64,000 bases of DNA from Takakia lepidozioides (taxonomy: Eukaryota; Plantae; Bryophyta), in assembly GCA_030704615.1 (NCBI GenBank), contig CM060733.1, positions 75,888,001-75,952,000 of the forward strand. Reading direction: 5' to 3'. Under the pieces are notes generated by a model that worked only from the letters and a program-made list of their open reading frames with translations, was not told the origin of the DNA and did no database searches. Below, piece after piece: positions 3,392 to 22,604 of the stretch; the first letter of the stretch is position 1, and each line of letters opens with the position of its first letter. Both the position numbers and the translations under genes were made by a program.

Positions 3392-4030
3392 GCCAATTCG
3401 GAGCTTCGGCTGCTCATCGGGGCATAACGGTCCCCCTCACACTCCCACTCGACCCTCGACCTGTCGGGCTCAGTGGAAATTCCCTTTGGTAGATGGCAGT
3501 CCGGAACAGCTCCCCACACCTTGGTCGCTTTCCGACTCGCACGCTTACTCACTAGTTTTTGGTCACCAACGGGCTTGCACCGTTCTCGGGGTTACTACTC
3601 CCTATATATACTTCTGTAGGTGTCCGCGGGAGTTCCACAAGTAGCCAAGTCCAAATCTGGTGCACCACCACTTAGATCCTCGATTGTCCCAATAATGAGC
3701 CGCGGTGAGTTTTGGCCCACCCACCACGGCCCCAATGGACCGTGGTGAGTCCCAAGACTCCCCACGACTCCCACCACAAGACCTCAGCCTCATGGTGAGT
3801 CTTATGCGACCCCCACTACGACTCCCTACGCTACCACCACCCCTCGTGGAGCCCCCACCGCCACCACCCGGTTTGCGGGGCTCCACCTAGTAAGCGCCAC
3901 CGCCTCCTTGAGTGCCTTTGGTACTCAAGGGTGCTTCAGCCCCCTTTCCTATTTGCTGCCACTGCCCCCACCACAGGGGCAGCCCCTCTTGTGTCCCGAT
4001 CCCTCGCCCTCAAGGCAAAGGGCCGCGACA
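3392..4030 (-). mobile_element. Solo LTR, 5' ~640 bp (inverted), same family as LTRs 17165-17896 and 19401-20134
   Basis: The reverse complement starts TGTCGCGGCCCTTTGCCTTGAGGG at 4030 and follows the 17165 LTR up to ...gcagccgaagctcc. Confidence 0.9.
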
Positions 4031-4216
4031 ACTGCCCCCTTTCGAGGGTGGGCCCTATACACCCTTTTTATATAGTGTGTGAAGGCGGTGGTGGAGCCTT
4101 CTAGAAGGGCCCCACCGCCTCAACCTCCTTGTAGAAAACTCTAGAACTAGAAGGAGGGCCACCTCCTACTTCTATGCTAGCTTCTACGTGGCCTCCATTA
4201 TTTCTTTTTCGCTTTA

Positions 4217-4298
4217 GGCCGGTTTGGGAGTTAGGCGCGCACATCAAAGCGAGTAACTATGACTTGAAGGGGAGTTTACCGAAGTGAGGTGCGTGACA
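4217..4298 (+). mobile_element. Solo LTR, 3' ~80 bp (forward orientation), the remainder of the 3392-4030 LTR
   Basis: Matches the LTR end ...ggcgcgcacatcaaagcgagtaactatgacttgaaggggagtttaccgaagtgaggtgcgTGACA. It is followed by GCAGT, the reverse complement of ACTGC at 4031-4035 (5-bp TSD). Confidence 0.9.
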
Positions 4299-4981
4299 GC
4301 AGTAACCGCAAGGCGAAATGGCTCTTAGTTACGCCGGCCTCGGCCGGAGTCCTCTCTCTCTAAAGAGGTGAGGGTTGTTTTTTACAGGTTTCTTCCGCCT
4401 TGCGTTATTTATAATCTAGGATTAGCCTCAAGTAGGCCTTGTCCCTACAAGGCAAGGCACATTAATGGGCTTCTGTCATTAATGCCAAGAGCCACGCCCA
4501 ACTCTCGGGTCCACCTATCATTTCCCTCGCCATGCCCCCTCCTAGTAGTTCGTCATACCCACTCCTCGTCATGCATGTATGCCCCACCATGCTCCATGCG
4601 CCCTTCCCCATGCTACATGTGAGGCCCCATGTTGCATGCTACATGGCCATGTTTGTTATCCATGCCACGAGCTTAGGGGGATGAGTTTAGGGCCTAGTTG
4701 CAAATTTGGACGTGACGTGGCGTTGACGCGTCAGCGTCACGTCCGACGCCAGGACGGACGTGCGTCACGTCACATCCTAAACCGACGTTATTGTACATAA
4801 ATATGTTTATTTTTTTACTTTACTATTGACTATTTACTATGAGAACCGACGTGGCAACCGATGTGGCCTCATTACGTGGACTTCATTAATTATCTGTAAA
4901 ATTCTTATATTATGATTTATATTGTCAATCATGCGAACGTCAGCAAAGGTTGGTCGGACAAATTTTTATTTTTTTTAAATA

Positions 4982-5465
4982 GGTGCGACCACCAGAAGGG
5001 GGTGGTCGCACATATTTTCTTATTTTTTAAATGGGTGCGACCACCAACAGGTGGTGGTCGCAGCATTTTCATTTTTTTTAATAGGTGCGACCACAAGCAG
5101 AGGGTGACTTTCGATCTTCGGTTTTTCTATCGGAGCCTTCGGAGAAAAAAAATAAAACTTTTTTTTTCTTTTCGTGCTCTTGTCGGATCTTCTATATCTC
5201 CTGATCGAGCTTGTGTAGATAGATGTTGCATAGTAGGGGTGATAGTAAACAGGTGCGACCACCAGCAGAGGATGGTCGCACATTTTTAATTATTTTTTAA
5301 ATAGGTGCGACCACCAACAGGGGATGGTCGCACATTTTTAATTATTTTTTAAATGGGTGCGACCACCAGCCGGTGGTGGTCGCAGACTTTTTCTTTATTG
5401 TTATTAGGTGCGACCGCTCCCTGGACACGTGGCGAGGCGTGAATGGGGAGCAAAGGCGGTCGCAC
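4982..5465. repeat. Palindrome array 1: ~7 copies of GGTGCGACCACC-agcagg-GGTGGTCGCA separated by A/T tracts, ~52-bp period
   Basis: Units near 4982, 5035, 5085, 5252, 5304, 5356, 5408. Confidence 0.92.
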
Positions 5466-5484
5466 GTCAGGCCTCTCCAGGCAG

Positions 5485-5493
5485 TATATAAGG
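5485..5493 (+). promoter_or_regulatory. Putative TATA box of the kinase-like gene
   Basis: TATATAAGG ~20 bp after the last palindrome, followed by a pyrimidine-rich stretch. Probable 5'UTR intron acceptor ttccgcag at 5761-5768 just before the ATG at 5781. Confidence 0.55.
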
Positions 5494-5780
5494 GCCTACC
5501 CCTCATTCTCAACCCACTTTTTTCCCTCTCTGTGAGTGCGGTTCTGAGGCTTCTTGGAGTTTGAACTTCGGTGGCCAGGACTGAGCGTGGGGGGGGGAGA
5601 AAGTGGATTTGTGTGGGGGAGGAATTTTTGCCTTTTTTTCCTGGGACTGCGGGAGAGTTTGCTTTGGGTACTATACCAATAGAGGGTGAGGAAATTGGTC
5701 TGCTAGTATATAAGGTTATCAATAGTTTGGGTTTAGTTTTCCGTTACGAAGCCGCCTCTATTCCGCAGAGTACTTTCATC

Positions 5781-7289
5781 ATGTCCGGAAACGTTGTTTC
5801 GAACGCAGTGTCAGGGGGTTCCTCGGGAAGTGGGCGTAAAGGTAGAAAGCGTAAACATGCACATGAACGGGATAGTCAGGTCAACAAAAAAGACTATCCA
5901 AGCGCAGAGGCCGCGAAGGTGGTGAAGCACGTAGTGCTGGATTATTTGAAGGACAATGACATAATGCGTTTGAATCTTTTGTATGTCCGACATGGGAATG
6001 ATGGGTTCCTTAGATTCCAGCACAATATGGAGATGAGAATGAGGGAGGCTTTGGCAAGGGATGAATGGGAGGAGGACAGGGCGAAGTTCCAGTTCACGAA
6101 ATGGATGGAGGACCGGACCCATGATGCCACATGGAATCTGAGGCAAACCATGGACAAGTTTGTTACGATAACACCTGTAGCTGAAGGTCGCATGCCAACT
6201 TCGGGAGATGAGTTGTTTGTGCTTGTGGATTGGTGGTCTGACATGGTAAAGGCCCACGCCAAACGACGTACAAAACCACTCCAATGGAAGGCAGGGTCCT
6301 CGTCCGCGGATGCGGCATTGAACGTGAGATACATATCCACAAACGCACAGGTACAACAACTCGACGCGCCCAAACAGGGAAGGTATGGTACAATTCGGAG
6401 GGTTAGAATTGTTGGGGATCAATTCATTCCTCCATCTTGGGAGCTAGTAGGGAAAACGCCCGGGGAAACAAATGCTGAGCTTGCCAAAGTCCAACATAAC
6501 AATGAGGCGTTGGCTGTGAAGTTCCATTATTTTGGCATCATAAAGTATTTTGCGTTGCATCCACGTCGAAATGAAGGTTACACACATTGGTGGAATGGGG
6601 GGACCATACGATCATGGTTGAGTATTGACAGGAAATGGGGGAATGATCGGGATAACAGGGAATTAATGGAACGACGGGGTACGAAGCAGGAAATGCAGGA
6701 GGTCAACCGACTGGTTCGATTCCGATAGAATCACACCCAATTGGCATGGGCGCCTTTGCATATCATGCTCAACGTCCATAATCACCACCTCTTGCACAAC
6801 GACATGTCCCCCGACAACATTTTGTTGCATTTTCCACAAGGGTCTGAAGATGTGTACATCGGGGTATGCAATTGGGGGATGGCCTCCACGATGGATGACC
6901 CAAAAACCACGTTGTACATTTTTGAGAGCAGAGACAAGATGATAAAGACTCTCGCACATAGATGGTGGATTGCACCTGAAATTGCAATTGTTGGTAATGT
7001 AGCCAACAACCAGTCAGATGGCACACCTCGTAGGCCCCCTCTAACCGTGCCATCAGAGACCTTTGCAATTGGGAAGATAGCCCAGGCAATAAATGGGGGT
7101 AACACGTTCGATGCAAGTCTATTCAACGATATTTCTACTAGAACTTGTTTTGCTTCCGCTCTGGAAAACTTGTGTATAGACACAGTAGAGTTGCGGTACA
7201 AACTAGAAAATGTTGTGAAGCGTTTCATGACGGGGCTATTCAATTGGCCTGAGCCCAAAAATTGCTGGAGGATGGATAAAAACTTGTAG
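5781..7289 (+). pseudogene. Transposon-borne protein-kinase-like ORF (~500 aa) with one in-frame TAG at 6726-6728
   Basis: ORFs 5571-6728 and 6741-7289 are in the same frame. Motifs in kinase order: GRYGTIRRV (Gly loop), ELVGK (beta3 Lys), HNDMSPDNILL (catalytic loop), GVCNWGMA (DFG position), WIAPE. N-terminal basic NLS-like GRKGRKRKH. Confidence 0.8.
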
Positions 7290-7454
7290 ACCTCTGACTG
7301 TACATCATGTTTGAATAAATGTTGTTTTCAATTGTGTTTGTCTCGTACCATAATGTTTTAATGGTTTGTTACTTGGCCATGGCACCTGGGTCCATCATAT
7401 GGGATAATCAAGCACCACACCCACGAATCTTTGAAGAGTGACAGTGTACATCGG

Positions 7455-10400
7455 GTCAATGGGTGAACCAATCGTTCCCCTGCCAAATGATTTTAGATTG
7501 ATTTGAAACTTTGGGAGTGTGTTGTATATGCCCTCTTTAAGTTACCGAACAAGTATAAGGTCAATCTAAAATGGTTCTAAGGGTGAACCAATAGTTCCCC
7601 TATTAAATGATTCATGATTGAAAATTGGTTGAAAGTTTAACGAGTCGTTCAGGGGGCAAATGATTATTTCTTCGCTTGCAACTTTGTGTACGTGATTTGT
7701 ACGTACTTAAGCACATATGGACCAAAGTTGAACTTCAACAAAGTTGTTTGAATTGGTTATTCAAATTCATAAGGAAAAACTATCTTTCGCCTGCACATGA
7801 ATTGCTTTTAATTCCATTCTGAAGCCATATGCTTGATAACAACATGAAGAGTTGCATGCAAAATATCATCATGAACAGACATCGTCTGCATCCAAAACAC
7901 ATTTTATTCCCTCATTTGCACTCCAAGGTGAAGTTATCTTCAACTTCATGCACTCTTCGTAGAGAGTTCTGCTATAGTGAGCATAGAGCAAAGGATGAAC
8001 GTTTTTTTCCAAACATTTTTCTTTGGTACCATTTTTGGTAAGGATGTGGTGGTGTGAGGGTTCAACTCACAGAACAAAATCAAGCCAAAAACAAAATCAT
8101 TGCGCCCCACACTCATTGCGCCCCACAATCCTATGCCCTCTAAATCATTTTATTTAGTAAAAATCCAGTTCAATTCAAAATTGGATGAAAGGGTGAACGG
8201 AAACTTCCCCGATGAAATGATATTTTATTGCTCCGAAACTTTGCAAGTGTCTTCTACATGCCCTCTTACACGTCTTTGAGAAGTATGACATCAATCTAAA
8301 ATGGTTTAAAGGGTGAATCAATCGTCCCCCTACCAAATGATTTTAAATTGATTTGAAACTTTGCAAGTGTCTTGTACATGCCCTCTTACAGGTCTTTCAC
8401 AAGTTTCAAATCAATCTAAAATGGTTAAAAGGGTGAATCAATCATGAACATATCAAATGATTTTGGAGTGCTTTAAAGCTTTGCAAGTGTCTTTCACATG
8501 CCATTTTAAAGGTACCGGACAAGTACGAGGTTAGTAAAATATGGTTGAAAGGGTGAACCAATTGTTCCCCTATCAAATGATTTTACATTGTTTTGAAGCT
8601 TTGCAAGTGTCAGCCACATGCCCTCCTACAAGTACCAGACAAGTATGACGTGAATAAAAAATGGTTGAAAGGGTGAACCAATCATTCCGCTATCAAATGA
8701 TTTTATATTGCTTTGGATGTCATTGCTTTGGTAATTCTAGCCCCCCAATGGCCCATTGTAACCCTTGAATTACAATTCAAAATGCAATTCAAGCCCTTAA
8801 AATTGATAATGTCAGTCCCTAAATGACCAACCCCGGCCGCCCCTCAAATTGTAATTTGAGCCCTTGAAATTGTCAATTCCAACCCCTCAAATTGCAATTG
8901 AAGCCCCTGAAACTTAATTCCAACCCCTCAAATTGCACTTCTAGCCCCTGAAATGACAATTCCCGCCCCTCAAATTGCAACTGCAGCCTGTGAAATGGCA
9001 ATTGCTAATGCAGCCCTTGAAATAGGCAATTGAAGCCCTTGGAATGGCAGTTTCAGCCCCTCAAATTGCAAGTCCAACCCCTGAAATTGGCAATTCAAGC
9101 CCCATAAATGGCAATTTCAGCCCTTGAAATTGGCTATGGGTGAATCAATCATTCCTCGGCCAAATGATTTTGGCATTTAAAACTTTGCGAGTGTCTTGTA
9201 CATGCCCTCTTAAAGTTACTGGACAAGTATGATGTCAATGTTAAATGGTTCAAAGGGTGAACCAACAGTTCCCCTGTTGGATGATTCATGATTAATCGTT
9301 AACGATTGATCTCATATTACACTAGGACCTATCAGAGGGTACATTGAACACACTGGCCAAGTCTCAAAACGAACGAAAATCATTTGGATGGGCAACCATC
9401 CGTCGGCCCATTGAACGAATTTCGGTTGATCTCATATTACTCTGGGGCCTCTTCCATGGCACATTGAACATACTGGCCAAGTCTCAAAGCGAACCAAAAT
9501 CATCTCGATGGCCAACCATCCGTTGAGCCATCGAATGAATTTCGATTGATCTGATATTAGTCCGGGACCTGTGAGAGGGTGTTTCAAACGTACTGGCAAA
9601 GTTTGGAAGCAAACAAAAATGATTTGGATGGGCAACCATCCGTTCACCCGTTGAATATATTCCGCTGGATCTTCTATTGCTTTGGGACCTGTTGGACTGT
9701 GTTTCGCGTGCTCGATTCGGTTTTGAATGGGGCGTGTAATGTAGCCATATGCAACGTGCGTGCCAAATTTGGGAACAAATATAATGCATTTGGACCCAAA
9801 ACCACAAACATGTGATTCTTAAATGTAATGATCAATTTCTTCCCTGTTTTGCACTCCAAACTTGATTTGTGTTCAATTTCATGCATTCTTCATAGAGAGT
9901 TCTGCAATAGTAAGCGAAGAGAACACTTTTTTTTTGGGCATTTTTTATTGGTCCAAATTTTGGCGGGGGAGTAGTGGTGGGATGCTGGAAGCCGCAGAAC
10001 AAAACTGAGCCAAAAACAAAATCGATATGTGCCAGAAACCCCCAATGAAAGGCAGTGCAAACCTATTTATTGGCTTAAAATTAATTTAAATTCAATTACA
10101 TTATGGAATGGCTTGGTGTCGATGGGGAGGCAAATGATTTATTCGTCTATTGTGTCTCCGCACATGTGTCGCACACATGTTCAAGCACATGCGGGAAAAA
10201 GAGGGGCTTCAACCACATCCGTTCAATGGGTGCAATAGCCGTGCACGCATTGCAGGATTTCTTTTTCGCAATGAACAAAAACCAGATGACAACTGAACGC
10301 CTGATTGGCCCATCAAACGAATTTCGATTGATCTCATATTACACTGGAACCTATCAGAGGGTATATTGAACACACTAGTCAAGTCTCAAAACGAACGAAA

Positions 10401-10955
10401 ATCATTTGGATGGGCAACCATCCGTCGGCCCATTTAACAAATTTCGATTGATCTCATATTACTGTGGGGCCTCTTCCATGGTACATTGAAGATACTGGCC
10501 AAGTCTCAAAGCGAACCAAAATCATTTGGAGGCAAATGATTCATGCGTCTGTTCATTTATTTGTGATTAATCGTTAATGGTGAAAAGGATAAACCAAAGG
10601 TTCCTTGATCAAAAAAAATTTGAATGATTTGAAATTTTGCCAATATGTTCTACATGCCTCTTACATGGACCGGACAAGTATGAGATCAATAAAAAATGGT
10701 TCACAGGAGGAACCAATGGTTACTTGATGTGCCGATTTCTGAATGCTTTCAAACTTTGTCATTGCATTGTACATGCCCTCTTAAAGGTACCGGACAAGTA
10801 TGAGTTCGATTTAAAATATTGCAATGGGTGAACCAATGATATCTTCAATCAACAATTTTTTATTGTTTTGAAACTTTGCCAGTATATTATATATGCCGAC
10901 AAACAGGTACCGGACAAGTATGAGATCATTCAAAAATGGTTCAAAGGATGAACCT
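7455..10955. repeat. ~120-bp satellite-like tandem repeat in both orientations, interleaved with duplicated unique blocks
   Basis: GGGTGAAccaatcgttcccc...aaatgatt recurs at 7461, 7581, 8191, 8311, 8431, 8551, 8671 (120-bp steps), 9138 and 9256. Reverse-type units (aaatcatttggatgggcaaccatcc) at 9300-9660 and 10300-10530. Forward units again at 10580-10955. Confidence 0.88.
8755..9135. repeat. ~21-bp degenerate minisatellite (CCCCTCAAATTGCAATTCAA-like)
   Basis: Many successive ccct(c/t/g)aaattg(c/t)aat units. Confidence 0.8.
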
Positions 10956-11051
10956 CGTATCTCCAAAAATTACGTAGACTATACAGTGGGTTGCACATTT
11001 AAGTTTTTGCAACCTGAGACCTTTGGCCTACTCCTTACGTTTCTAGCCTTT

Positions 11052-13619
11052 TTAGTCATCTTCATCTAGATTTATTACTTCGTTGTCGTCATCTCTAGAT
11101 GTTGATGAAGATGCTCCGGGTGTAGAGGACGTGCCTCCACCAGTACGGAGAGCTCGAGCCTGGGCTCGAGTGGTCAAAGAGGGACCCAATGTTGTGTGGT
11201 CCACCCTTGCCATCATGCGTAGCGTTCTAAGCGAGTGCTGACTCTCTTCCACATTTGCCAGAGCCGGGTGTGTCGCTCTTGCTACGGCGGCATGCAATTT
11301 TTCAATTAAATCCGATATGTTTGGAAGTGGCAAGAACACCCCTGGAATAGGGGCAACTTGGTCACGTCATGTGTTCTGTCAATACTTTAGAACATTCATG
11401 ATGGCAGCCTTGAAATTGTCCAACACCTCCTGCTGCTGGGGGTCTCTGCGCAACTCTGGAAGAAATGGCTCATCATCCCGACGAGGCACCCAGTACGTCT
11501 CATTCATATCCTCCCAGCGGATGCTAGCGGCCTCCAACTCCCTTAGAAATAGGTCTCTCCCAATCGGTTCGCGATTGTATGGGTCGTTTTCCGCTGGCAC
11601 CCACGGATCCTCAAACAGTCAGAAGAATCTTTGTCTGGTACAGCTCCAATGCCCTCCCAAGTTCCGGCAAAAAAGCTCCATTTGGACTGGGTCCCGTATG
11701 CCTCTAGCACGCACGGTTATTTCCTAGTTGGATGTCACCCAAAAGGTCACCGGATCTTTAACCCTAGTTAACGTCTTCGCATCCAAGGCGTGCATCTCTC
11801 TTGGAGCATCCCATGTCATTGTCTCCCCCCAGTGCTGCCAATTTAAAAAATCGTACGGCGATACATCCAATGGCATGTTGTACCGGTTGTACTCGTATCC
11901 CGTGGGCATATTGTCTTGCAACCCAAACAACTCGTAGAAACGTCGATGGATTGGTCCACGACAGTGAGGGCATTGGCTGGCTCGCATGGCTGCCAATATG
12001 AGACATGTGGGATGGAACAAATGGCCACATGAACCAAGCATATAGCCTCCCTCCGGTCCATAAGGGTTTAGGCACATTGTGCACACCGTACCATCTGTTA
12101 CCCATGTCGCTGGATTGCTCAGTGGTATCAGCGTCCATTTATCCTCATTAATGTAGGATGACATCCTCGGCCTGGTGTCCCACTCCTCCTCTACTTCCAA
12201 ATCCCAGTTTATACTGTTATTGGTATCGGAAATTGTATGCACACAGTGCTCAAACATGGCATGCACATCACCCCATGTGGTGAATCCAGTGTACTTCGAC
12301 GTGAATACATCACGTACAGTGTCGTGCCTTTGCAAATTAGCATAGATGCTATCTATGCTTCGATTCGACAAACCTGCTGCACGTTGGAGGGAGGACAACG
12401 CTTCTTCTATCCGTGTTTCCCGTGATGCTAGATGGCCCGCCCATGTCACCCAATTCCGCCAATTCCCCTTCAACCATGGCCACGATCGGATTTGCATGGC
12501 ACTTGAGTACCGATATGCAATAGCCCTAGCTTGCTCGCGTTCCCCCACAAGCTGCTCTAATTTCTATTCTTGGGCCGATATAATTTGCACGGCTGAACAT
12601 TCCTCAGTTTCCACTATGGGGTCCTTCCCTTTTCTTGCCCTCTCCGCCGCAAATCTTTCTTCCTCAACCCTCGCCGGCTCCAGTTCAGACGTTTGCACTT
12701 CATTCCCATGCCCGATTGAGTCAACCCCGTCGATGACGCGGTCAATGTCCATTGGTGGCATATTCAAACGCGCCAATATGTCTTGCTCGTTGGTGATTGG
12801 CCTCGAGTCCTGAAGTACACCACGTACGCTGTCGAGAGTCCCCAACCCCATTCTTTCCAGCAAATTTGCTAGTTGCCACCGTTGCAAATGAACAATGTCC
12901 TACAGGTCTTTGATGTGTTGTTCATGTGCGACCAACTGTTCCTCCAACGGAGAGCGTACCTCGCCCCCCTCCACCTCAGACGTTGAAAGCCCGGCTGCGG
13001 AGACCTGTTGCGGCGTATAATCTGGAGGTTGGTTTGCATTTCCTCCTTCTTCCACATCGTCGTTTCCATCCGCCTTTCCTCCTTCTTCCACCTCGTCGTT
13101 TCCATCAAACCGTATGATGTCCTGCCCCTGACGTATATACAAGTCTGGGATATCAGAGAACATGTATAGTCTAGTACGCTGTCTCGCAGTGGCAGTTTGT
13201 CAATCCACCGGTCGCAATAAAATCAACTCTGTGTACAACTTGGCCGCAAATAAATACAGGACCTTGTTGTTGACGAGCGGTTGACCCCACAATGTTGTAT
13301 GTACCTCCTCTGCCCTGTGGCGGAAATGCGGGTTGGCGCACGAATGCAAGCTAGCTTGATTTTGTTTGGTTTGTGGATCATGCTTATCTCTGGGCCACAA
13401 ACGATTTATGTGACACCAGTCCACAAATTTCCTGCAGTCACCAAGCGATCACCGCTGCCCCAACTTCCAAACTTCCCAACCTGGTTCCGCAAGAATGTTT
13501 TGGTCATTGTATATGTCCCAACGAAGTTCGCGCCTGGCCCCTTTTGGTTTTTTTTTGGGAGGTCCAGGTTCATTATCGTCATCCCTGGGATGACCTCCTC
13601 TGTCTTCCTCCTCCGCCAT
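11052..13619 (-). pseudogene. Transposon-borne 855-codon ORF: NLS, unknown N-terminal domain, acidic linker, predicted coiled coil, RING-H2 finger; 8 nonsense codons, no frameshift
   Basis: ORF-track pieces 13200-13424, 12900-13163, 12564-12887, 11724-12548, 11379-11600 and 11052-11339 all share one frame with the ATG at 13619 (MAEEEDRGG...PPKKKPKGARR). RING-H2: CTMC-x14-CGHLFHPTC-x10-CPHC. Confidence 0.82.
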
Positions 13620-13968
13620 TTATGGCTTTGGCTTACCCCTACTCGACAGGTGTTTGCTAAGAAAAATGCTCTCCCAACCCTCCTAAATCGTACCTAATCC
13701 TACTCCCTAATGAATCTTCCCCAAGTACTAGAGGCACTCCCTCGACAGTTCTAAGTGATATGACGCAATATGAAAAAAACGTGGGTGCTAGAGGAGGGCT
13801 TCCCGGGAGGTACTCAGCATCGATTTCGTAGAATCCAACGGCCCAAAATACCCCCCACCCAACCAATAGCACCCCTCTCCACTTGGACTCAATGACAAGG
13901 AATGCAACATCCCATCGCCCACCAAGTCCTGGTGTGGAGAAAAGTGAGGGAGAGAATGGCCTCCAAGG

Positions 13969-13976
13969 CCTTATAA
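13969..13976 (-). promoter_or_regulatory. Putative TATA box of the RING ORF
   Basis: Minus-strand TTATAAGG ~60 bp from the edge of palindrome array 2, followed by pyrimidine-rich sequence. Confidence 0.5.
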
Positions 13977-14034
13977 GCCCCCCCTCCACACTCGGGGCGC
14001 GCGCTGTCATCATGACTGCGCACGCTAGTGATAG

Positions 14035-14830
14035 CTGCGACCGCCAGCAGGGGTGGTCGCATATTTTTTTCTTTTCTTTATTATGTGCAACCACCAACAG
14101 GGGGGTGGTCGCAGTTTTGTTTATGTTTTTTAATGGGTGCGACCACCAGCAGGGGGGTGGTCGCAGATTTTTTAATTTTTTTTAATGGGTACGACCACCA
14201 GCAGGGGGGTGGTCGCAGATGTTTTTTTTTAAATCAGCAGGGAGGTGGTCGCATAATGTTTTTTTTAAATAGGCGCGACCACCAGCAGAGGGGTGGTCGC
14301 AGAGATTTTGTTTAAAACAAATAGGTGCGACCACCACCTGCTGGTGGTCGCACTATTTTCCTTTTCTTTAATAGATGCGACCACCAGCAGGGGGGTGGTT
14401 GTAGGGGGGTGGTTGCATAATTTTCCGATTTTTTAATATCTACCAACAGTCAGTAGCTCAGTTGGTTAAGTGCACTGAGTGCGACCCGGACGATTCTGGG
14501 GTCAAATCTTGCTACTTGATGGGTGTGGTATGGATCGTGTGTGGTGCCCCATTCCTACGCCTCTTGGCGCATAAATGAAAGAGGTTATTTTCTCCTCTCA
14601 CTACTAAGGGGCCTGATTTGTGAGCTGTCGCTCCCAGGTGTTTCCCAAAATAAAATAAAATAAAATCTGCGACCACCAGCAGGAGTAATCAGTAAATCAG
14701 TAAATAGGTGCGACTACCAGCAGGGGGGTGGTCGCAACATTTTTATTTTATTTTAACAGTTGCGACGACCGCTACTGGTGGTCACCCAATTTTTAAAAAA
14801 AAAATAGGTGCGACCACCAGGAGGTTGGTC
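14035..14830. repeat. Palindrome array 2 (~13 units of TGCGACCACC-N-GGTGGTCGCA), internal to the hAT element and interrupted by a SINE
   Basis: Units near 14036, 14086, 14138, 14190, 14273, 14326, 14376, 14668, 14709, 14761, 14809. Confidence 0.92.
14442..14666 (+). mobile_element. tRNA-derived SINE-like insertion
   Basis: Pol III box A TAGCTCAGTTGG (14454-14465), degenerate box B GGGGTCAAATC (14498-14508), unrelated body, 3' (AAAAT)n tail 14647-14666. It interrupts the palindrome array. Confidence 0.65.
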
Positions 14831-15210
14831 CCCTTGCACCTGTATGTATGTTTGGAGAGGTGGATGAAAAGCACATGTATGGACTCTCCATGGATTTGTG
14901 AAGAGGAAGATGAATGTTGGGAGCTGCACCTGGCTTTTGTGGCTTTCGAAACCATAATATGAAATCAACAATGTAAAGGTAATGACGAAACACAAACACA
15001 CGCACAACCACCAAACCCTTTCTTGGGTACACATATTCCACCATTTTTATTTCCGTACACGTATGCATGTACCCAAACTGAAACATGGATATCTATGGAA
15101 ACATACTACACATCATGTGACAGGTCATAGAAGTTGTAGCTGTACCTAATTCCGTCTGCCACGACGACGATGGTATGATCTCACGTCTAGTACAAAATCT
15201 TTGTCCCCAC

Positions 15211-18200
15211 TCACTTCACATGATCAGTGCTAGAATCATGATCTCCATCTGTTCTTTCATTTCCAGAGGCAACTGGCCGTTGGACCTGTAGTCGTCCTCG
15301 AAGTACATTCAGTTGTCTCTCTGGTCGATTTCCACTCCTATCATAAATACCATCTAGGGTATCAGGCCTGTTTACAGGTCGGTCACCAACAAAAGGTTGC
15401 ACAATTCTCTGCCGTTTCTGGGCTTGTCCCGGATTTCGTGGTGGCCTTAGAGCAGGTCTCGTATGAGGAAGGCTACTCGCACGTACATCAGAGGGGCCGA
15501 CATGAGAGGAAAAGGCATGAGATGGACCAGCGAGGGTCGAGGGAGCACGGTTCACATGCGGACGTCCTCGGGCCAGATGAAATAACAATTGGCGGTCGTC
15601 GTCATCTGATGGTTCGACTTGCAGAAGTCTCGTAGCAGAAGAACCATCTCTCAGGATCGGAGTAGCGATGGAAGGAATTACATGAGGGGGAGAGAGACTA
15701 GATGGACTAGCATGGGATGGACCGGCTTGAGAAAGAGAAACATGAGATGGAGCGGGGTGAGATGAAGCACGGTTCACAGGGGCATGATGTCAGTGAATGA
15801 ATGACAACGGCCGGTTGTCATCATCCGACGATTCGACCTGCACATCTCCCGCAGTCCGTGGAGCTCGTGGTGGGGGAGAGTTGACCTCAACTTCATTGTT
15901 GAGAGTGTGCTCCACTGGGGGAAGGGGGTCCGCAATTGGGATGACACCATGTCGCAGTTCATCAACAACAAGGTCATCGAAGGATGGATGCATTGCAGCA
16001 TCATCGTCATTAAATTCATATGGGTCATGTGGAGGATTGCCCACATCATCGGACCTATCCCAACCATCGGAGTCGGAGTCCCTCGCGACGTCAGTGTCAT
16101 CATTGCTGCTAGATTGGACCTCTGAGACAGATTCTTCAGACAACAGATTCTTCTCGTACCATGTAGATGCGTCACTTGCTCTCCTCTCTCGCAGTAGCCT
16201 ACAATTCGTGTAGACATAAACCAATTTGTCAGCCCTAACATTATTCAACTTGTTGCGAATCTTGTTGTGAACAAACGAGTAATTGCTCCAGTTCCGCTCA
16301 CAGGACGAGACAGAGCACACTTGAGCAAGAATACGTTTTGCAATGGGAGCTAACGTTCTTGCTCCAGCTCCAATCAGATCCCACCATTATGTGGCAACAT
16401 GTTCATTGTTTTTGGATCCGGCATGTCATGGAAAGGATTCTGCCGATCCAAGAAGCACTGGTACTCGGACAACGCTCGCTCTGCCATATTCAAGGGCACA
16501 AGTTGCATGATGACCCGTACAAGCCCGGCTTTGGCATCCACATCGTCTCTCAAATCCGTATTGTCCAGCAAGAATGGATTCAACAAGGCCCCCGCATAAT
16601 GCAAGTCCGTGCGAACCATCCGTTTGCGGTCGTAAAATGCATCCTCGGTCCTTGCCGCCAAATCATCGTCCATAGAAAATGGAGGACGCCTCAAGAATTG
16701 CACGTGCTTCTCAAGGTTTTCCAATATCAACCATGCTTTATCCATTATTGGTTGTTTTCCATCAAACTCCCGCAAAGCAATCAACACCGGCTCCACCATG
16801 TTCACAAAATTTGCACATTTCGCCTAGAAATCGTCGGAGCGAATGATTGCGCGGACCCTCCGACTTTTGCTCAAAGACTTGGACTTACGAGAGTCGCGTA
16901 AGGTGCCCACATACGCATCCCATTGAGGGTCAATGATCACCTGTTCCAGACCCACCCTCAAAGTCACCAGTCGATCCACCATAAATTTTTTTGTGGCAAA
17001 GCGGGTTTCACCCGGGTTCCTAAGGCTGTATTTGGGTTCATGTTTTCTAAACAATGCCAAAGGGATGTGATGTGTACAAATGAACATCACAACCGACTTT
17101 GCCTTTTTTACTAGTTGTTTCATCCATGATTCTTTTCCCCAATCCTCCAAAAGGAGATCAAAGATGTCGCGGCCCTTTGCCTTGAGGGTAAGGGGGTCGG
17201 GACACATGAGGGGCTGCCCCTGTGGTGGGGGCAGCGGCAGCGATAGGTATGGGGAGCTGAAGCACCCTTGAGTGCCCAAGGCACTCAAGGAAGCGGAGGC
17301 GCTCACTAGGTGGAGCCCCACACACCGGGTTGCGGTGGGAGTGGGGGTGGCTCCACAAGGGGTGGTGGTAGCGTAGCGGGACTTAGTGGGGGTGGCATAG
17401 GACTCACCATGAGGTGGAGACCTCGAGGTGGGAGTCGTGGGGAGTCTTGGGACTCATCACGGTCCAATAGGGCCGCGGTGAGCGGGCCAAGACTCACCGC
17501 GACTCACCGCCGGGAGTCGAGGGTTCTCGTGGTGGTTCGCCATAAAATGGCATGGCTGGTTGTGAAACCCCCGCGGACAGCTACAGAAGTATATATAGGG
17601 AGTAGTAACCCCGAGAACGGTGCAAGCCCGTTGGTGACCAAAAACTAGTGAGTAAGCGAGCGAGCCGGAAAGCGACCAAAGAGTGGGGAGCTGTTCCGGA
17701 CTGCCATCTACCAAAGGGAATTCTCCTAGTCCCAATTAGGTGGAGGGTTTTAGAGGGAAGCGAAAGGGGACCGTTATGTCCCGGTGAGCAGCCGAAGCTC
17801 CAAGTTGGCCCGGCGGCCAGGTTGGGAGTCAGGCGCGCGCATCAAAGCGAGTAACTATGACTTGAAGGGGAGTTTACCGAAGTGAGGTGCGTGACATTTG
17901 GTATCAGAGCTTAGAGTTCAGTACGCGATCGTCCTTGGGATTGGCCTCATCATGGGGTCGGGCAAGCCAAAGCGAAAGCGGAACGGCCCAAAAGATGATG
18001 ATCCCGGTGAGCCCGATGGGGGCGGCGTGTCACCGAGGCGGCCGTTTGAGGAAGCGATGCATGTTTCCGAAAACGAGGCCGCCCAAGAGTGGGAGGAATC
18101 CGAGGAGTCGGAGCCCGAGGAATCCTTGAGAGCTCCGACAAACCGAGAGATGTCTCCCATGCCGGCAGCCTTTTGGGAAGGGTTGTTGGCGCAGTTTGGC

Positions 18201-21078
18201 GGGACGTTGAAAGACGTGTTGAAGGCGGCTAATGCCACTTCCACTAAGGCAAAGTTTAAGGTGAAGCCTAAGGAACCCGGCACCTTCGAGGAGATTATGA
18301 AAATGAACCTAAGTACGAGGTGGAGGCAATACTTAAGTCGAGGAGGTTCAGGAACCGAGAAACGGAGTATCTCGTCAAATGGAAGGGCTATCATCATGTG
18401 GAGGCATCTTGGGTGCGTGCCTCAGAAATGGGAAACGCATCCGAGGCGGTTGCAGCTTTTGAAGGGCGACCTCAAAAGCGGAAGAAGCGTTGATGGGGAC
18501 ATCAACCTTGGAGCGTGGGGGAGGAAATGCATGCTTAGCCCGGTTTAGCTAGCTCAGGAATCCGATTGCAAAAACTTGTATTGTACAAAAATTTGTTATA
18601 AAGGAAATGGGTTCCAAATATTGTGCGTCCTATTGTGTTTGGAATGGTGATGCATGGTGTGGTTGGCTAGTGTGTAGAATGCATGCTAGCTTACAAAAAG
18701 TGGGAGAGGTAAATTGGGTTAATCGTGTGTTTGCGCAGAGCCGAAATCAGGTGACTCCCATCCAAGGGGCAAGGAAACTTGCGCCTTCTTTGGGAGTTCA
18801 CGTGCTAGTGCGCACCTGGCGCGTGCGCGTACTATAACTGCGCTACCGCGGGGGTTGCCTTGTAGTGCGGGCTAACGCGGAAGCTACGTGCTTCCGTTCA
18901 CGTACTATAATCGTGTAACCTCGGGACGAAGTCGTAGTGCGGCTTCGACGTGTTCCCGTACCTCAGGCCAGCATTCCAAGGCGGACCCAATTGTAGTGAT
19001 TGGGGCGCACGGTTGGTTCAAGGTTATCTTCCTAGTCAAAGAGGGTTCCAGGTGAACCCTTGCTCAAGGTGATGCCAAAAGCGGCATCATGAGCGATCGC
19101 AAGCAATGTTGTTGCAGTAAGGCGATTCGATCCTCGGGGAGAATCGTTCCTTGGCCTTGAAGTAGGCCAAGAAGAGTGCACTGGGAGGAGCTGGAGAGGC
19201 TCCACCCTTGGCCGGGACTTGGAGGAAGTCGGCCGAACTAGCTAGTGGAGAGTAGAGTCAAGTGTGGGGTTTGGTTCTTTGCCATAGGACGCCATGGTGC
19301 GGAAACAAACTCCTTGATGTGGGACGCCACAACTTGGATGTTCGTTTCTACAAAATGAACAAGTCGATGAGGACATCGACTCTCGGTTGGTAGGGGTGTG
19401 TGTCGCGGCCCTTTGCCTTGAGGGTAAGGGGGTCGGGACACATGAGGGGCTGCCCCTGTGGTGGGGGCAGCGGCAGCAATAGGTATGGGGAGCTGAAGCA
19501 CCCTTGAGTGCCCAAGGCACTCAAGGAAGCGGAGGCGCTCACTAGGTGGAGCCCCGCACACCGGGTTGCGGTGGGAGTGGGGGTGGCTCCACAAGGGGTG
19601 GTGGTAGCGTAGCGGGACTTAGTGGGGGTGGCATAGGACTCACCATGAGGTGGAGACCTCAAGGTGGGAGTCGTGGGGAGTCTTGGGACTCATCACGGTC
19701 CAATAGGGCCGCGGTGAGCGGGCCAAGACTCACCGCGACTCACCGCCGGGAGTCGAGGGTGTTCTCGTGGTGGTTCGCCATAAAATGGCATGGCTGGTTG
19801 TGAAACCCCCGCGGACAGCTACAGAAGTATATATAGGGAGTAGTAACCCCGAGAACGGTGCAAGCCCGTTGGTGACCAAAAACTAGTGAGTAAGCGAGCG
19901 AGCCGGAAAGCGACCAAAGAGTGGGGAGCTGTTCCGGACTGCCATCTACCAAAGGGAATTCTCCTAGTCCCAATTAGGTGGAGGGTTTTAGAGGGAAGCG
20001 AAAGGGGACCGTTATGTCCCGGTGAGCAGCCGAAGCTCCAAGTTGGCCCGGCGGCCAAGTTGGGAGTCAGGCGCGCGCATCAAAGCGAGTAACTACGACT
20101 TGAAGGGGAGTTTACCGAAGTGAGGTGCGTGACAAAAGATATGAGCAACACACCCTTGGTAATATAGATGAGGATATCGTACCATCAAAATATCGGCCAT
20201 ATTAATCATGTTAGATGCATTGTCCGTGCACACTTGGACAATTTTATCAGCTCCAATTTTATCGATGTAACTCGTCAACAACCCTGCTTGATAACGCGCA
20301 TCTTTTCTCTCCCCGCTTGTATCAACGGATCCCAAAAATTGTTCCCCCGCATGACAGACTAGCATGACATTGAACAGTGGTCGATTAGTAACAGAACTCC
20401 AACCGTCCGCATATATAGTGCTTCCATATTTCCGGAGAAAATCACCTCTCTTTTCATTCACCTTTTGGGTGAGGTCAGATATAGCCTCTTCTAGCAATCA
20501 TGTGCGGAGATCGCGATAACTCGGAGGTGTATATGTGGACTTGGAATCAGACGTGGCTTTGACAGCAGCCACAAACGCAGGAAGCCTCGAGACATTGAAC
20601 GGAATATTGGCCTCGTAGAAAAATTGGGCCCACTTCTTATCCAGAGTCATCCTGTGCGACAAATTTAAGCCTTCTTGCATTGATTATTGCCTCAAGGTCT
20701 GGTCCGTACAAGTGTTGGCGTACAATCGGGTGTTGCTCCTGACCCACCGGCTTCTCCATGAACAGTAGACGCCTCGCAAGAATCCCCCTGGGTACAACTC
20801 TGAGGGACAGTTTGATTCGAACCTGGAGTGTTTGGCTCAGACGCCGCGGCCACATCAAGAGAAGGTGGGATATTGCCTCCACATTGGGCAAAGTGGGCTT
20901 TCACTCACATGGAGGCTTTTGGGCACAAACAAACTCCTGCATTTTTCCCATCTCTGTAGCCGAGGTGATATAACATGCGATCTTTGCGACTCGTCAGCTT
21001 CAATGCACAAAGATTGCATTGAACACTGTCCTTTTTGTGTGGGTCTATGGTGAACCAAGGGATCCACTCCTCCCTCAT
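15211..21078 (-). pseudogene. hAT transposase (BED zinc finger + DUF659 + hAT dimerisation domain + Ser/Pro-rich tail), disrupted by an LTR insertion, stops and frameshifts
   Basis: BED-like W..F...VQCNLC...RMLYHL...C; KWAQFFYEANIPFN; TIYADGWS; VQVCTDNASN; CVAHIF|DLLLED split by the LTR element; PGETRFAT; LHYAGALLNP; CSVSSCERNWSNYSFVHNKIRNKL...ADKLVYVYTN. Confidence 0.93.
17165..20134 (+). mobile_element. Non-autonomous Ty3/gypsy chromovirus deletion derivative. LTRs 17165-17896 and 19401-20134, TSD AAAGA
   Basis: TG...CA LTRs, ~99% identical (five transitions and one 2-bp indel seen). PBS TGGTATCAGAGC (tRNA-iMet) at 17899-17910. Gag N-terminal remnant from 17952. Chromodomain YEVEAILKSRR...EYLVKWKGY...ASW at 18293-18493 in another frame. 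AAAGA at 17160-17164 and 20135-20139. Confidence 0.95.
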
Positions 21079-21388
21079 CCTCACACCCAAAACCCTAACC
21101 ACAGACTTAAGGTTGAACAAAGAACACTAGTGTACTTGGTAGATTTGTCAAGAGCAATAGAAGTTAGAACAGAATGCGATGGCCCAACACTACGACATCA
21201 ATCCAAGTGGATCAATGCACCATGTAGTATTGTGCTTTTTGACAATTTACTGCAGTGGCTCTGGTGGAAGCCACAACAGCAAATGGTCCGCACCCTCCTC
21301 TTGGGCTTACACTCTTGCTCAAGGAATAAAGAACATTCACTCGTCACAAAAGTGTTTGCCACAAAAGAAGTGAGGGGCATTGTGACCA

Positions 21389-21397
21389 CCTTATATA
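21389..21397 (-). promoter_or_regulatory. Putative TATA box of the hAT transposase
   Basis: Minus-strand TATATAAGG ~50 bp from the edge of palindrome array 3. Confidence 0.55.
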
Positions 21398-21443
21398 CCC
21401 TCCAGCCTCCAAGCCTCACACGCTTGACGAATCAGATCCAATG

Positions 21444-22105
21444 CTGCGACCGCTCCAGGTCGCACAAGGAAGTCGCATGTTTTTCTTAAAAAAAAAACTA
21501 CTGCGACCACCCTCATGCTGGTGGTCGCACCTATTTTTTTTTTTAAAAATCTGCGACCACCCCATGCTCGTGGTCACAGAGATTATTTAAAAATAAAATA
21601 AAATTGCTGCGACCACCCCCTGCTGGTGGTCGCACCTATTAAAAAAACAGAAAATTTCTGCGACCACCCCCCTGCTGGTGGTCGCACATATTAAACAAAT
21701 ACAAAATTTCTGCGACCACCCCCATGCTGGTGGTCGCACCTATTAAAAAAACGAAAAATGCTGCGACCACCCCCATGCTCGTGGACACAGAGAATTTGTT
21801 TTTTTTTAATAATTAAAATTCTGCGACCACTCCCCTGCTGGTGGTCGCACTTATTAAAAAAACAGAAAAATGCTGTGACCACCCCCATGCTGGTGGTCGC
21901 ACCTATTACAAATAAAATAAAAATTGTGCGACCACCAGTAGCAGTGGTCGCAACTGTTTAAGAAAAGAAAAAAATGCGACCACCCCTGCTGGTGGTCGCA
22001 TCTATTTTTAAAAAACAAAAAATGCTGCGACAACCCCTCTGCTAATGGTCGCAACTATTAAAAAATAAGATAAATTCTGCCACCACCACCATTTGGAGGT
22101 CGCAC
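21444..22105. repeat. Palindrome array 3 (~13 units, central spacer mostly in opposite orientation to arrays 1 and 2), right subterminal region of the hAT
   Basis: TGCGACCACC-cctgct-GGTGGTCGCA near 21502, 21552, 21608, 21659, 21711, 21762, 21822, 21875, 21927, 21975, 22026, 22078. Confidence 0.92.
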
Positions 22106-22604
22106 CAATTTAAGAATAATGATTTAAAAATGACCTCAACTATTGGCGGATGAAGTAATTTATAAAACAATTTATCCACTTGCCAAGGTGTCGCTTGGAA
22201 TACAACGTGTCCACCTACGTAGCATATTTTTCACCTAACTCATGTTTTACTGATTTTTCGGCAAAACTGACGCGACGTTGGTCGCGTCAGCGTCAGGTCC
22301 GACGTGACGTGCAACCCTGGTTTAGGGATGAGTTTAGAGTCCATGTTTTAGGATTTAGCTTTTAGGGCGGCGGCTGGGTTAGTGTGTGATGTTTGTTTAA
22401 TTGGAATTTGCAAACTATGTGAGTTCTTTGGATTATGTTTATATTGTAAATGGATTATGTGTGACTATGAATGGATTATTGAGCATGAATGGTGGGTGCA
22501 GATCCCAGGCATTCAAATATTCAAACATTCAAACAATCAAGCAAGTAAGAGCTCATTCTTTGAAACATTTGCATGTTTATGTTTTCTCCTCTTTCACACA
22601 ATGG

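What the first reader, a model, noticed from the sequence alone, without database searches (positions are those of the whole stretch)
4693..22319. Giant three-gene hAT transposon carrying a protein kinase and a RING-H2 protein
Seen: an 8-bp TSD (GTTTAGGG), short imperfect TIRs and shared subterminal TGACG blocks bound 17.6 kb (~14.6 kb without the nested LTR element). Inside are an hAT transposase and two long intronless ORFs, a kinase-like one (+) and an NLS/coiled-coil/RING-H2 one (-), which converge on a satellite spacer. Known: classical hATs (Ac, Tam3, hobo) make 8-bp TSDs, are a few kb long and encode only a transposase. Inference: the cargo ORFs are full-length, frameshift-free and share the transposase's promoter architecture. 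They look like resident genes of a multi-gene hAT family rather than Pack-type captured fragments. A kinase plus a putative E3 ligase could form a TE-encoded phosphorylation/ubiquitination module that regulates transposition or counters silencing, analogous to VANC in VANDAL MULEs. I know of no description of this architecture.
Basis: partly seen in the sequence, partly recalled or inferred. Interest (0 to 1): 0.92.

Follow-up and report, generated by a model that had tools for sequence, protein, structure and literature searches.

The report
Dead three-gene hAT transposon copy
This is a mutated, immobile copy of a large cut-and-paste transposon whose lineage carries, beside its transposase, its own protein-kinase gene and a ubiquitin-ligase-like gene; this is unusual for the hAT class and the job of the extra genes is untested.

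Summary
Window 4693-22319 is one hAT element of 17,627 bp. It has an 8-bp duplication (GTTTAGGG), a good right terminus (...GCAACCCTG), a mutated left terminus, GACG-rich subterminal blocks, a nested LTR element and three genes. Each gene sits behind a 52-bp palindrome array and a TATAAGG box.

The claim that the ORFs are full-length is overstated: this copy is dead.
- The kinase has one stop and a D-to-N change in its DWG motif.
- The RING gene has eight internal stops.
- The transposase has stops, at least one frameshift and the LTR insertion.

The main inference, resident accessory genes rather than captured fragments, is supported by loci I fetched myself.
- A 15.8-kb metagenome copy (L013) has intact ORFs for kinase, RING protein and DUF659 transposase between CAGGGTT/AACCCTG termini.
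- Ceratodon purpureus has 95-98% identical multi-copy elements with RING, kinase and transposase. One is a deletion derivative with good 9-bp TIRs and an exact 8-bp duplication.
- All kinase catalytic residues are invariant across 32 family members.

Function of the kinase and RING proteins is untested. I found no published description. The scan has reported this same family many times on other DNA of this genome, so this is another copy, not a first sighting.

The parts
4685..4692 (.). left target-site duplication GTTTAGGG
   Evidence: sits in a degenerate telomere-like repeat
4693..4790 (+). left terminus: imperfect TIR CCTAGTTGCA plus subterminal GACG/CGTC block
   Evidence: 7 of 10 match to the reverse complement of the right TIR; relatives start CAGGGTT
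4931..5415 (+). 52-bp palindrome array 1, upstream of the kinase gene; TATAAGG at 5487-5493
5781..7289 (+). intronless atypical protein-kinase gene (HND...N, DWG family); in-frame stop at 6726-6728, D-to-N in DWG
7450..10960 (.). satellite spacer: 120-bp units in both orientations and 21-bp units
11052..13619 (-). RING-H2 protein gene, 855 codons, 8 internal stops and no frameshift; TATAAGG at 13969-13975 (minus strand)
14028..14830 (.). 52-bp palindrome array 2, upstream of the RING gene, interrupted by a SINE-like insert at about 14441-14650
15211..17164 (-). transposase, C-terminal two thirds (includes the hAT dimerisation region); stops and a frameshift at 16389/16386
17165..20134 (+). nested non-autonomous LTR retroelement (TG...CA LTRs of 734 bp, 99% identical, duplication AAAGA, tRNA-Met-like primer site)
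20135..21069 (-). transposase, N-terminal third (zinc-finger-like region and DUF659); stops and a frame change
21472..22132 (.). 52-bp palindrome array 3, upstream of the transposase; TATAAGG at 21389-21395 (minus strand)
22265..22319 (+). right subterminal GACG block and TIR ...TGCAACCCTG
   Evidence: same AACCCTG end as Ceratodon, L013, L006 and L011 elements
22320..22327 (.). right target-site duplication GTTTAGGG

Best explanation
Window 4693-22319 is a single, decayed copy of an autonomous-type hAT (Ac-like, DUF659) DNA transposon.

Its lineage carries two conserved accessory genes inside the terminal repeats:
- an atypical protein kinase whose catalytic residues are all conserved in the family;
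- a large coiled-coil RING-H2 protein with a family-specific N-terminal domain.

Shown:
- one pair of hAT-type termini with an 8-bp duplication;
- three intronless genes, each behind the same palindrome array plus TATA box;
- the same gene trio within homologous termini in other genomes, including intact and multi-copy elements.

This copy is immobile. An LTR retroelement splits the transposase, and all three genes carry stops. Those that could be typed, against a sister copy or at conserved W, R or Q positions, are C-to-T or G-to-A changes. The left terminal repeat is also mutated.

Inferred:
- The transposase binds the subterminal GACG repeats and moves the whole unit by cut and paste.
- The per-gene arrays co-regulate the three genes. 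An element-encoded DNA-binding protein may be involved, because the motif differs between lineages while the array positions are kept.
- The kinase and RING proteins modify host or element proteins to favour transposition, for instance by countering silencing or controlling transposase activity.
For: Ends and unity:
- The duplication and termini are as described.
- The terminal motif block occurs only at the ends and there is no internal terminus.
- The right end ...AACCCTG matches the ends of Ceratodon copies L003, L004 and L005.
- L004 is bounded by CAGGGTTGT...ACAACCCTG with an exact duplication AGTTGAAG.
- L013, L008 and L009 share one left end with three different flanks.

Linkage:
- L013 holds kinase (494 aa), RING protein (1039 aa) and DUF659+Dimer_Tnp_hAT transposase (966 aa), all open, between termini 445 and 16201.
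- Ceratodon L001, L003, L004 and L005 are 95-98% identical copies with RING(-), kinase(+) and transposase(+).
- L014 has TIR, kinase(+), X(-) and RING(+).
- The window proteins are 34% (kinase), 36-38% (RING) and 30-47% (transposase) identical to those of L013, and colinear with them.

Constraint:
- The kinase alignment of 32 sequences keeps G187, K212, E231, N328-D329, N334 and D352-W353 invariant.
- The RING alignment of 24 sequences keeps the zinc ligands and several Trp invariant.

Per-gene arrays also occur in Ceratodon, L006 and L013, with different motifs.

Decay:
- Breaks in all three genes.
- Stops fall at conserved W, R or Q positions.
- 21 of 37 differences from the sister copy L002 are G-to-A or C-to-T in the window copy, including the kinase stop.
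Against: - The left TIR differs at 3 of its first 7 bases from the CAGGGTT seen in relatives.
- The duplication lies in a degenerate repeat, so the left boundary rests on weaker evidence than the right.
- L013's two flanks do not form a duplication (AATAAAAG against CTTCATAC). This may be a chimeric metagenome assembly, but it is unexplained.
- Gene order and orientation differ between lineages.
- One Ceratodon kinase gene (P0002) lies just outside the element next to it. L010 and L012 show a kinase without RING or transposase in the sequence available.
- dN/dS between this copy and L002 is 0.51 on only 23 changes, which is not decisive.
- No expression, activity or transposition data.
Confidence: 0.85

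Rival explanations
1. Two independent elements lie side by side: a non-autonomous kinase+RING element (4693 to about 14400) and a hAT transposase element (about 14000 to 22319). The middle palindrome array would then be two abutting subterminal regions.
For: A third array of the same 52-bp repeat lies at 14028-14830. It pairs as an inverted repeat with the right-hand array (I1-I7).
Against: - There is no TIR-like or GACG-rich terminal block anywhere near 14000-15000.
- The array is followed by a TATAAGG box and the RING gene, exactly as at the other two genes.
- Relatives have internal per-gene arrays inside a single pair of termini.
- The trio is enclosed by one TIR pair in L013 and in Ceratodon.
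Confidence: 0.04
2. This is Pack-type or transduplicated cargo: host kinase and RING gene fragments captured recently by a hAT, with no function for the element.
For: DNA transposons in plants often capture host fragments. Here the cargo ORFs are broken.
Against: - Relatives carry full-length intronless ORFs with their own promoters.
- Linkage is kept at 30-47% protein identity.
- Catalytic and zinc-binding residues are invariant.
- No close cellular relative was found. The best solved-structure hit for the kinase is BUB1 at E 0.009, and the RING protein matches others only in its RING domain.
Confidence: 0.05
3. The kinase-RING pair is a mobile or selfish module of its own that associates with different carriers. 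hAT would be only one of them, so 'hAT accessory genes' is too narrow.
For: - L010 and L012 show kinase genes without RING or transposase within the fetched sequence.
- P0002 lies outside the adjacent hAT in L001.
- An unchecked scan note (s1-454421) reports the module with or without a hAT transposase.
Against: - Wherever both ends could be read (L004, L013, the window), the genes lie inside hAT termini.
- L010, L011 and L006 also show CAGGGTT or AACCCTG ends near the genes.
- Copies without a transposase are expected as deletion derivatives, as L004 shows.
Confidence: 0.06

Closest known systems
Classical plant hAT elements (Ac/Ds, Tam3, Tag1)
   Same: Short TIRs beginning CAGGG, 8-bp target duplication, subterminal short repeats, and a transposase with DUF659 and a hAT C-terminal dimerisation region.
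   Different: - 15-17 kb rather than a few kb.
- Two or three additional conserved genes (kinase, RING-H2 protein, in some lineages a RING-N-domain paralog).
- Each gene has its own repeat-array promoter.
- The genes are intronless.
VANDAL21/Hiun MULEs with VANA, VANB and VANC (own knowledge)
   Same: A cut-and-paste DNA transposon that encodes accessory proteins beside the transposase. VANC acts against host silencing, which is the kind of role proposed here.
   Different: Different superfamily and unrelated proteins. No anti-silencing activity has been shown for the kinase or the RING protein.
CACTA/En-Spm (TnpA+TnpD) and PIF/Harbinger (ORF1+transposase) (own knowledge)
   Same: Multi-ORF DNA transposons in which the second protein is needed for transposition.
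   Different: Their second proteins are DNA-binding cofactors, not enzymes of protein modification. Their gene architecture also differs.
Pack-MULE / Pack-type transduplicating elements (own knowledge)
   Same: Non-transposase coding sequence lies between TIRs.
   Different: Those carry recently captured host gene fragments, usually without a transposase. Here the genes are full-length in relatives, ancient and conserved with the transposase.

Membership tests
hAT superfamily transposon | 8-bp target-site duplication | tested here: met
   GTTTAGGG on both sides, though inside a degenerate repeat. The relative L004 has an exact AGTTGAAG.
hAT superfamily transposon | short terminal inverted repeats of the CAGGG... 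type | tested here: inconclusive
   The right end TGCAACCCTG is as in relatives. The left end CCTAGTTGCA matches only 7 of 10 positions, so it is mutated or natively imperfect.
hAT superfamily transposon | transposase with DUF659 / RNase-H-like core and hAT C-terminal dimerisation domain | tested here: met
   DUF659 at E 4e-27. Pfam did not call Dimer_Tnp_hAT on the window piece. That piece is colinear and 30-58% identical with the L013 and L005 transposases, and L013 carries PF05699.
Autonomous (active) element | open transposase frame and intact ends | tested here: not met
   LTR insertion, stops, a frameshift and a mutated left TIR.
Eukaryotic protein kinase superfamily | Gly-rich loop, VAIK Lys, helix-C Glu, HxD...N catalytic loop, DxG | tested here: met
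   All are invariant across 32 family members. Pkinase is matched below the Pfam cut-off. In the window copy DWG reads NWG and a stop splits the domain, so this copy is not functional.
RING-H2 E3 ubiquitin ligases | C3H2C3 zinc-ligand pattern and RING fold | tested here: met
   zf-RING_2 at 31.4 bits, above the cut-off. The ligands are invariant. The modelled RING of the Ceratodon homolog matches RNF12, HRD1, EL5 and others at Z 5.7-6.5.
RING-H2 E3 ubiquitin ligases | E2 binding and ligase activity | not testable with these tools
   Needs a biochemical assay.
Pack-type captured cargo | fragments of host genes, recent, without conserved linkage to the transposase | tested here: not met
   Full-length ORFs with their own promoters, linked to the transposase across lineages 30-47% identical.

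The most novel reading that the evidence does not exclude
The family is a self-regulating three-gene mobile system.
- An element-encoded DNA-binding protein would recognise the lineage-specific palindrome arrays and switch on all genes together.
- The kinase and the RING-H2 ligase would act on host silencing or DNA-repair proteins, or on the transposase itself, to permit transposition.

This would be a protein-modification counter-defence carried by a plant DNA transposon. The RING protein's N-terminal domain has a confident model (pLDDT 94) and no similar solved structure, so it could be a new fold that targets the ligase.
Probability: 0.25. Interest if true: 0.8.

Novelty: new variant of a known kind. 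Interest (0 to 1): 0.55.

Why it matters
hAT elements are textbook single-gene transposons. A lineage that has kept a catalytically complete kinase and a RING-H2 protein inside its termini, each with its own promoter, suggests these transposons manipulate protein phosphorylation and ubiquitination in the host. The lineage spans a moss, an unidentified metagenome organism and this land plant.

Intact copies (L013, and the open kinase and RING ORFs in Ceratodon) make the question testable in a transformable moss system. This window's copy is a dead relic. It mainly adds one more dated, bounded insertion to a family the scan has already met many times in this genome.

Tried and rejected
- **RING N-terminal domain:** I looked for a known fold. 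Foldseek against PDB gave nothing. VIA wide gave a best Z of 2.9. The Atlas gave only TM 0.47 to a 'putative plant transposon protein' cluster (PF20167). Pfam on 24 members gave nothing consistent. The PF20167 match is a lead, not a finding.
- **RING C-terminal domain:** the Atlas feature search gave no usable hit.
- **Whole RING model:** it matched only RING domains and coiled coils.
- **Literature:** five full-text searches found no description of a hAT with kinase or RING genes. Carey et al. 2021 (PMC8245031) report only that hATs are abundant in Ceratodon.
- **Other copies in the window:** none of the coding parts recurs in this window.
- **Rfam and tRNA scans:** Rfam found nothing across the element. 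The tRNA scan of 14300-14800, around the SINE-like insert, found nothing.
- **Selection test:** dN/dS against the sister copy L002 has too few changes to decide.
- **Rejected readings:** two abutting elements, Pack-type capture, and a chance duplication as the sole basis for the ends.
Full report
**Anatomy**

The stretch 4693-22319 (17,627 bp) is flanked on both sides by GTTTAGGG. The right end reads ...GACGTGACGTGCAACCCTG. The left end reads CCTAGTTGCAAATTTGGACGTGACGTG, a 7 of 10 match to the reverse complement of the right end. GACG/CGTC motifs are concentrated at the termini: 12 in 4700-4799 against a window mean of 0.38 per 100 bp. No other 100-bp bin between 4000 and 23000 reaches 5, and no second TIR-like site exists inside.

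Both flanks are a short degenerate telomere-like repeat (ATGAGTTTAGRG). The duplication is what a hAT insertion would leave, but it is not strong evidence by itself. TTTAGGG is not enriched in the window as a whole.

**Genes**

- **Kinase, plus strand.** An intronless kinase-like ORF runs from the ATG at 5781 to 7289. It matches Pkinase weakly and has one in-frame stop at 6726-6728.
- **RING-H2 protein, minus strand.** An 855-codon frame runs from 13619 to 11052, with 8 internal stops and no frameshift.
- **Transposase, minus strand.** A DUF659 hAT transposase (E 4e-27) runs from about 21069 to 15211. It has several stops and a frameshift at 16389/16386.
- **Nested LTR element.** The transposase is split at 20135/17164 by a 2,970-bp LTR element. 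This has 734-bp TG...CA LTRs 99% identical, a duplication AAAGA and a tRNA-Met-like primer site.
- **Spacer.** The kinase and RING genes converge on 3.5 kb of 120-bp and 21-bp satellites, some in inverted orientation.

**Shared promoter architecture**

Arrays of a 52-bp unit built round the palindrome TGCGACCACC...GGTGGTCGCA lie at 4931-5415, 14028-14830 and 21472-22132. Each array is followed 55-90 bp downstream, on the gene's strand, by TATAAGG, at 5487, 13975 and 21395. My first suspicion was that the middle array marked the junction of two elements. That did not survive: there is no terminal block there, and the array behaves as the RING gene's promoter.

**Relatives fetched here**

*Kinase and Ceratodon copies.* The kinase piece found a 96% identical Logan contig (L002) and a Ceratodon purpureus protein. 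Four Ceratodon loci (L001, L003, L004, L005) are 95-98% identical copies of one element. Its layout is TIR, RING(-), 210-bp satellite, kinase(+), hAT transposase(+), TIR.
- Three of them share the right end ...ACAACCCTG.
- L004 is a deletion derivative bounded by CAGGGTTGT...ACAACCCTG with an exact 8-bp duplication AGTTGAAG. It still holds an open 792-codon RING ORF 99.7% identical to that of L001.

*L013.* A 17,136-bp metagenome contig holds a complete element between CAGGGTTACC (445) and GACAACCCTG (16201), with every ORF open:
- kinase, 494 aa;
- a 343-aa paralog of the RING protein's N-terminal domain;
- RING-H2 protein, 1039 aa;
- DUF659+Dimer_Tnp_hAT transposase, 966 aa.

L008 and L009, from other samples, share the same left end with different flanks.

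*Other loci.* Ceratodon L014 repeats the L013 order from the left TIR. In all these lineages a lineage-specific motif array precedes each gene. The window's three proteins are colinear with those of L013 at 34% (kinase), 36-38% (RING) and 30-47% (transposase) identity.

**Constraint**

In 32 kinase relatives the Gly-loop G, the AAK lysine, the helix-C Glu, HND, the catalytic-loop Asn and DWG are all invariant. The family is therefore predicted to be active. It has no close solved relative; the best hit is BUB1 at E 0.009.

In 24 RING relatives the C3H2C3 ligands and several Trp residues are invariant. An AlphaFold model of the Ceratodon RING protein gave:
- a confident N-terminal domain;
- two long coiled coils;
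- a RING that matches RING-H2 ligases at Z 5.7-6.5;
- a confident C-terminal domain.

Folded alone, the N-domain reached pLDDT 94 and matched no solved structure above Z 2.9.

**Decay of this copy**

- Six of the eight RING stops align with W, R or Q in one or more relatives; three of them are at W positions conserved in nearly all (TGG to TGA/TAG, CGA to TGA, CAG to TAG).
- The kinase stop is CAA in L002 and TAA here. The DWG Asp is Asn here.
- Of 37 differences from L002, 21 are G-to-A or C-to-T in the window copy. This pattern fits deamination of methylated cytosines in a silenced element, which is an inference.
- dN/dS against L002 is 0.51 on 23 changes, which is not informative.

**Limits**

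- No reads or expression data could be obtained.
- The left TIR is poor.
- L013's flanks do not form a duplication.
- Gene order differs among lineages. Some kinase genes were seen without partners in the limited flanks available.

**Prior knowledge**

Five literature searches found no description of such hATs. Within this scan the family has been noted at least 21 times in this genome. Several follow-ups reached the same reading. I treated those notes as leads and re-derived the evidence independently.

Noticed in passing
window 14441-14650: A roughly 210-bp insert inside the middle palindrome array has a tRNA-like head (TAGCTCAGTTGG ... GGGTCAAATCT) and a (TAAAA)n tail, so it is probably a tRNA-derived SINE. 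It is single copy in the window. ARAGORN and Rfam do not call it.
   Followed up: partly
window 3392-4298: Sequence related to the nested element's LTR lies about 400 bp left of the hAT. It is 84% identical (inverted) over 3392-4033 and 95% identical (direct) over 4217-4298, which suggests a rearranged solo LTR or fragment of the same retroelement family.
   Followed up: no
window 7450-10960: The 120-bp satellite between the convergent kinase and RING genes occurs in both orientations (for example arms 9522-9620 and 10855-10953). Read-through transcripts could therefore fold into hairpins. Whether this feeds small-RNA silencing is unknown.
   Followed up: no
L001 5384-7345 (Ceratodon purpureus CM026436.1): An open 653-aa ORF with DUF7869 (E 1e-42) is flanked by GTCGGCGGGCAGCCGAC palindromes. 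It looks like a different DNA transposon inserted next to the kinase gene P0002. A possible link to the 'Lanisha' elements named in PMC8245031 was not checked.
   Followed up: no
L013 4701-5732 and L014 13424-13921: Some lineages carry a fourth gene. It encodes a paralog of the RING protein's N-terminal domain without the RING. The window element has no such gene.
   Followed up: partly
L001 10001-11491: The annotated Ceratodon kinase gene M758_3G001500 (P0002) lies 750 bp outside the left TIR of the adjacent RING-kinase-transposase element. It probably belongs to a second, interrupted element of the other subfamily.
   Followed up: partly
window 4951-5415, 14036-14399, 21488-22110: On the strand of the downstream gene, most 52-bp units of the kinase and RING arrays (one was read in the transposase array) hold a T-rich tract ending in AG directly followed by GTGCGA, which resembles adjacent 3' and 5' splice sites. 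An unchecked scan note (s1-473471) claims such arrays are spliced in another copy. Here the arrays lie upstream of the TATA boxes.
   Followed up: no
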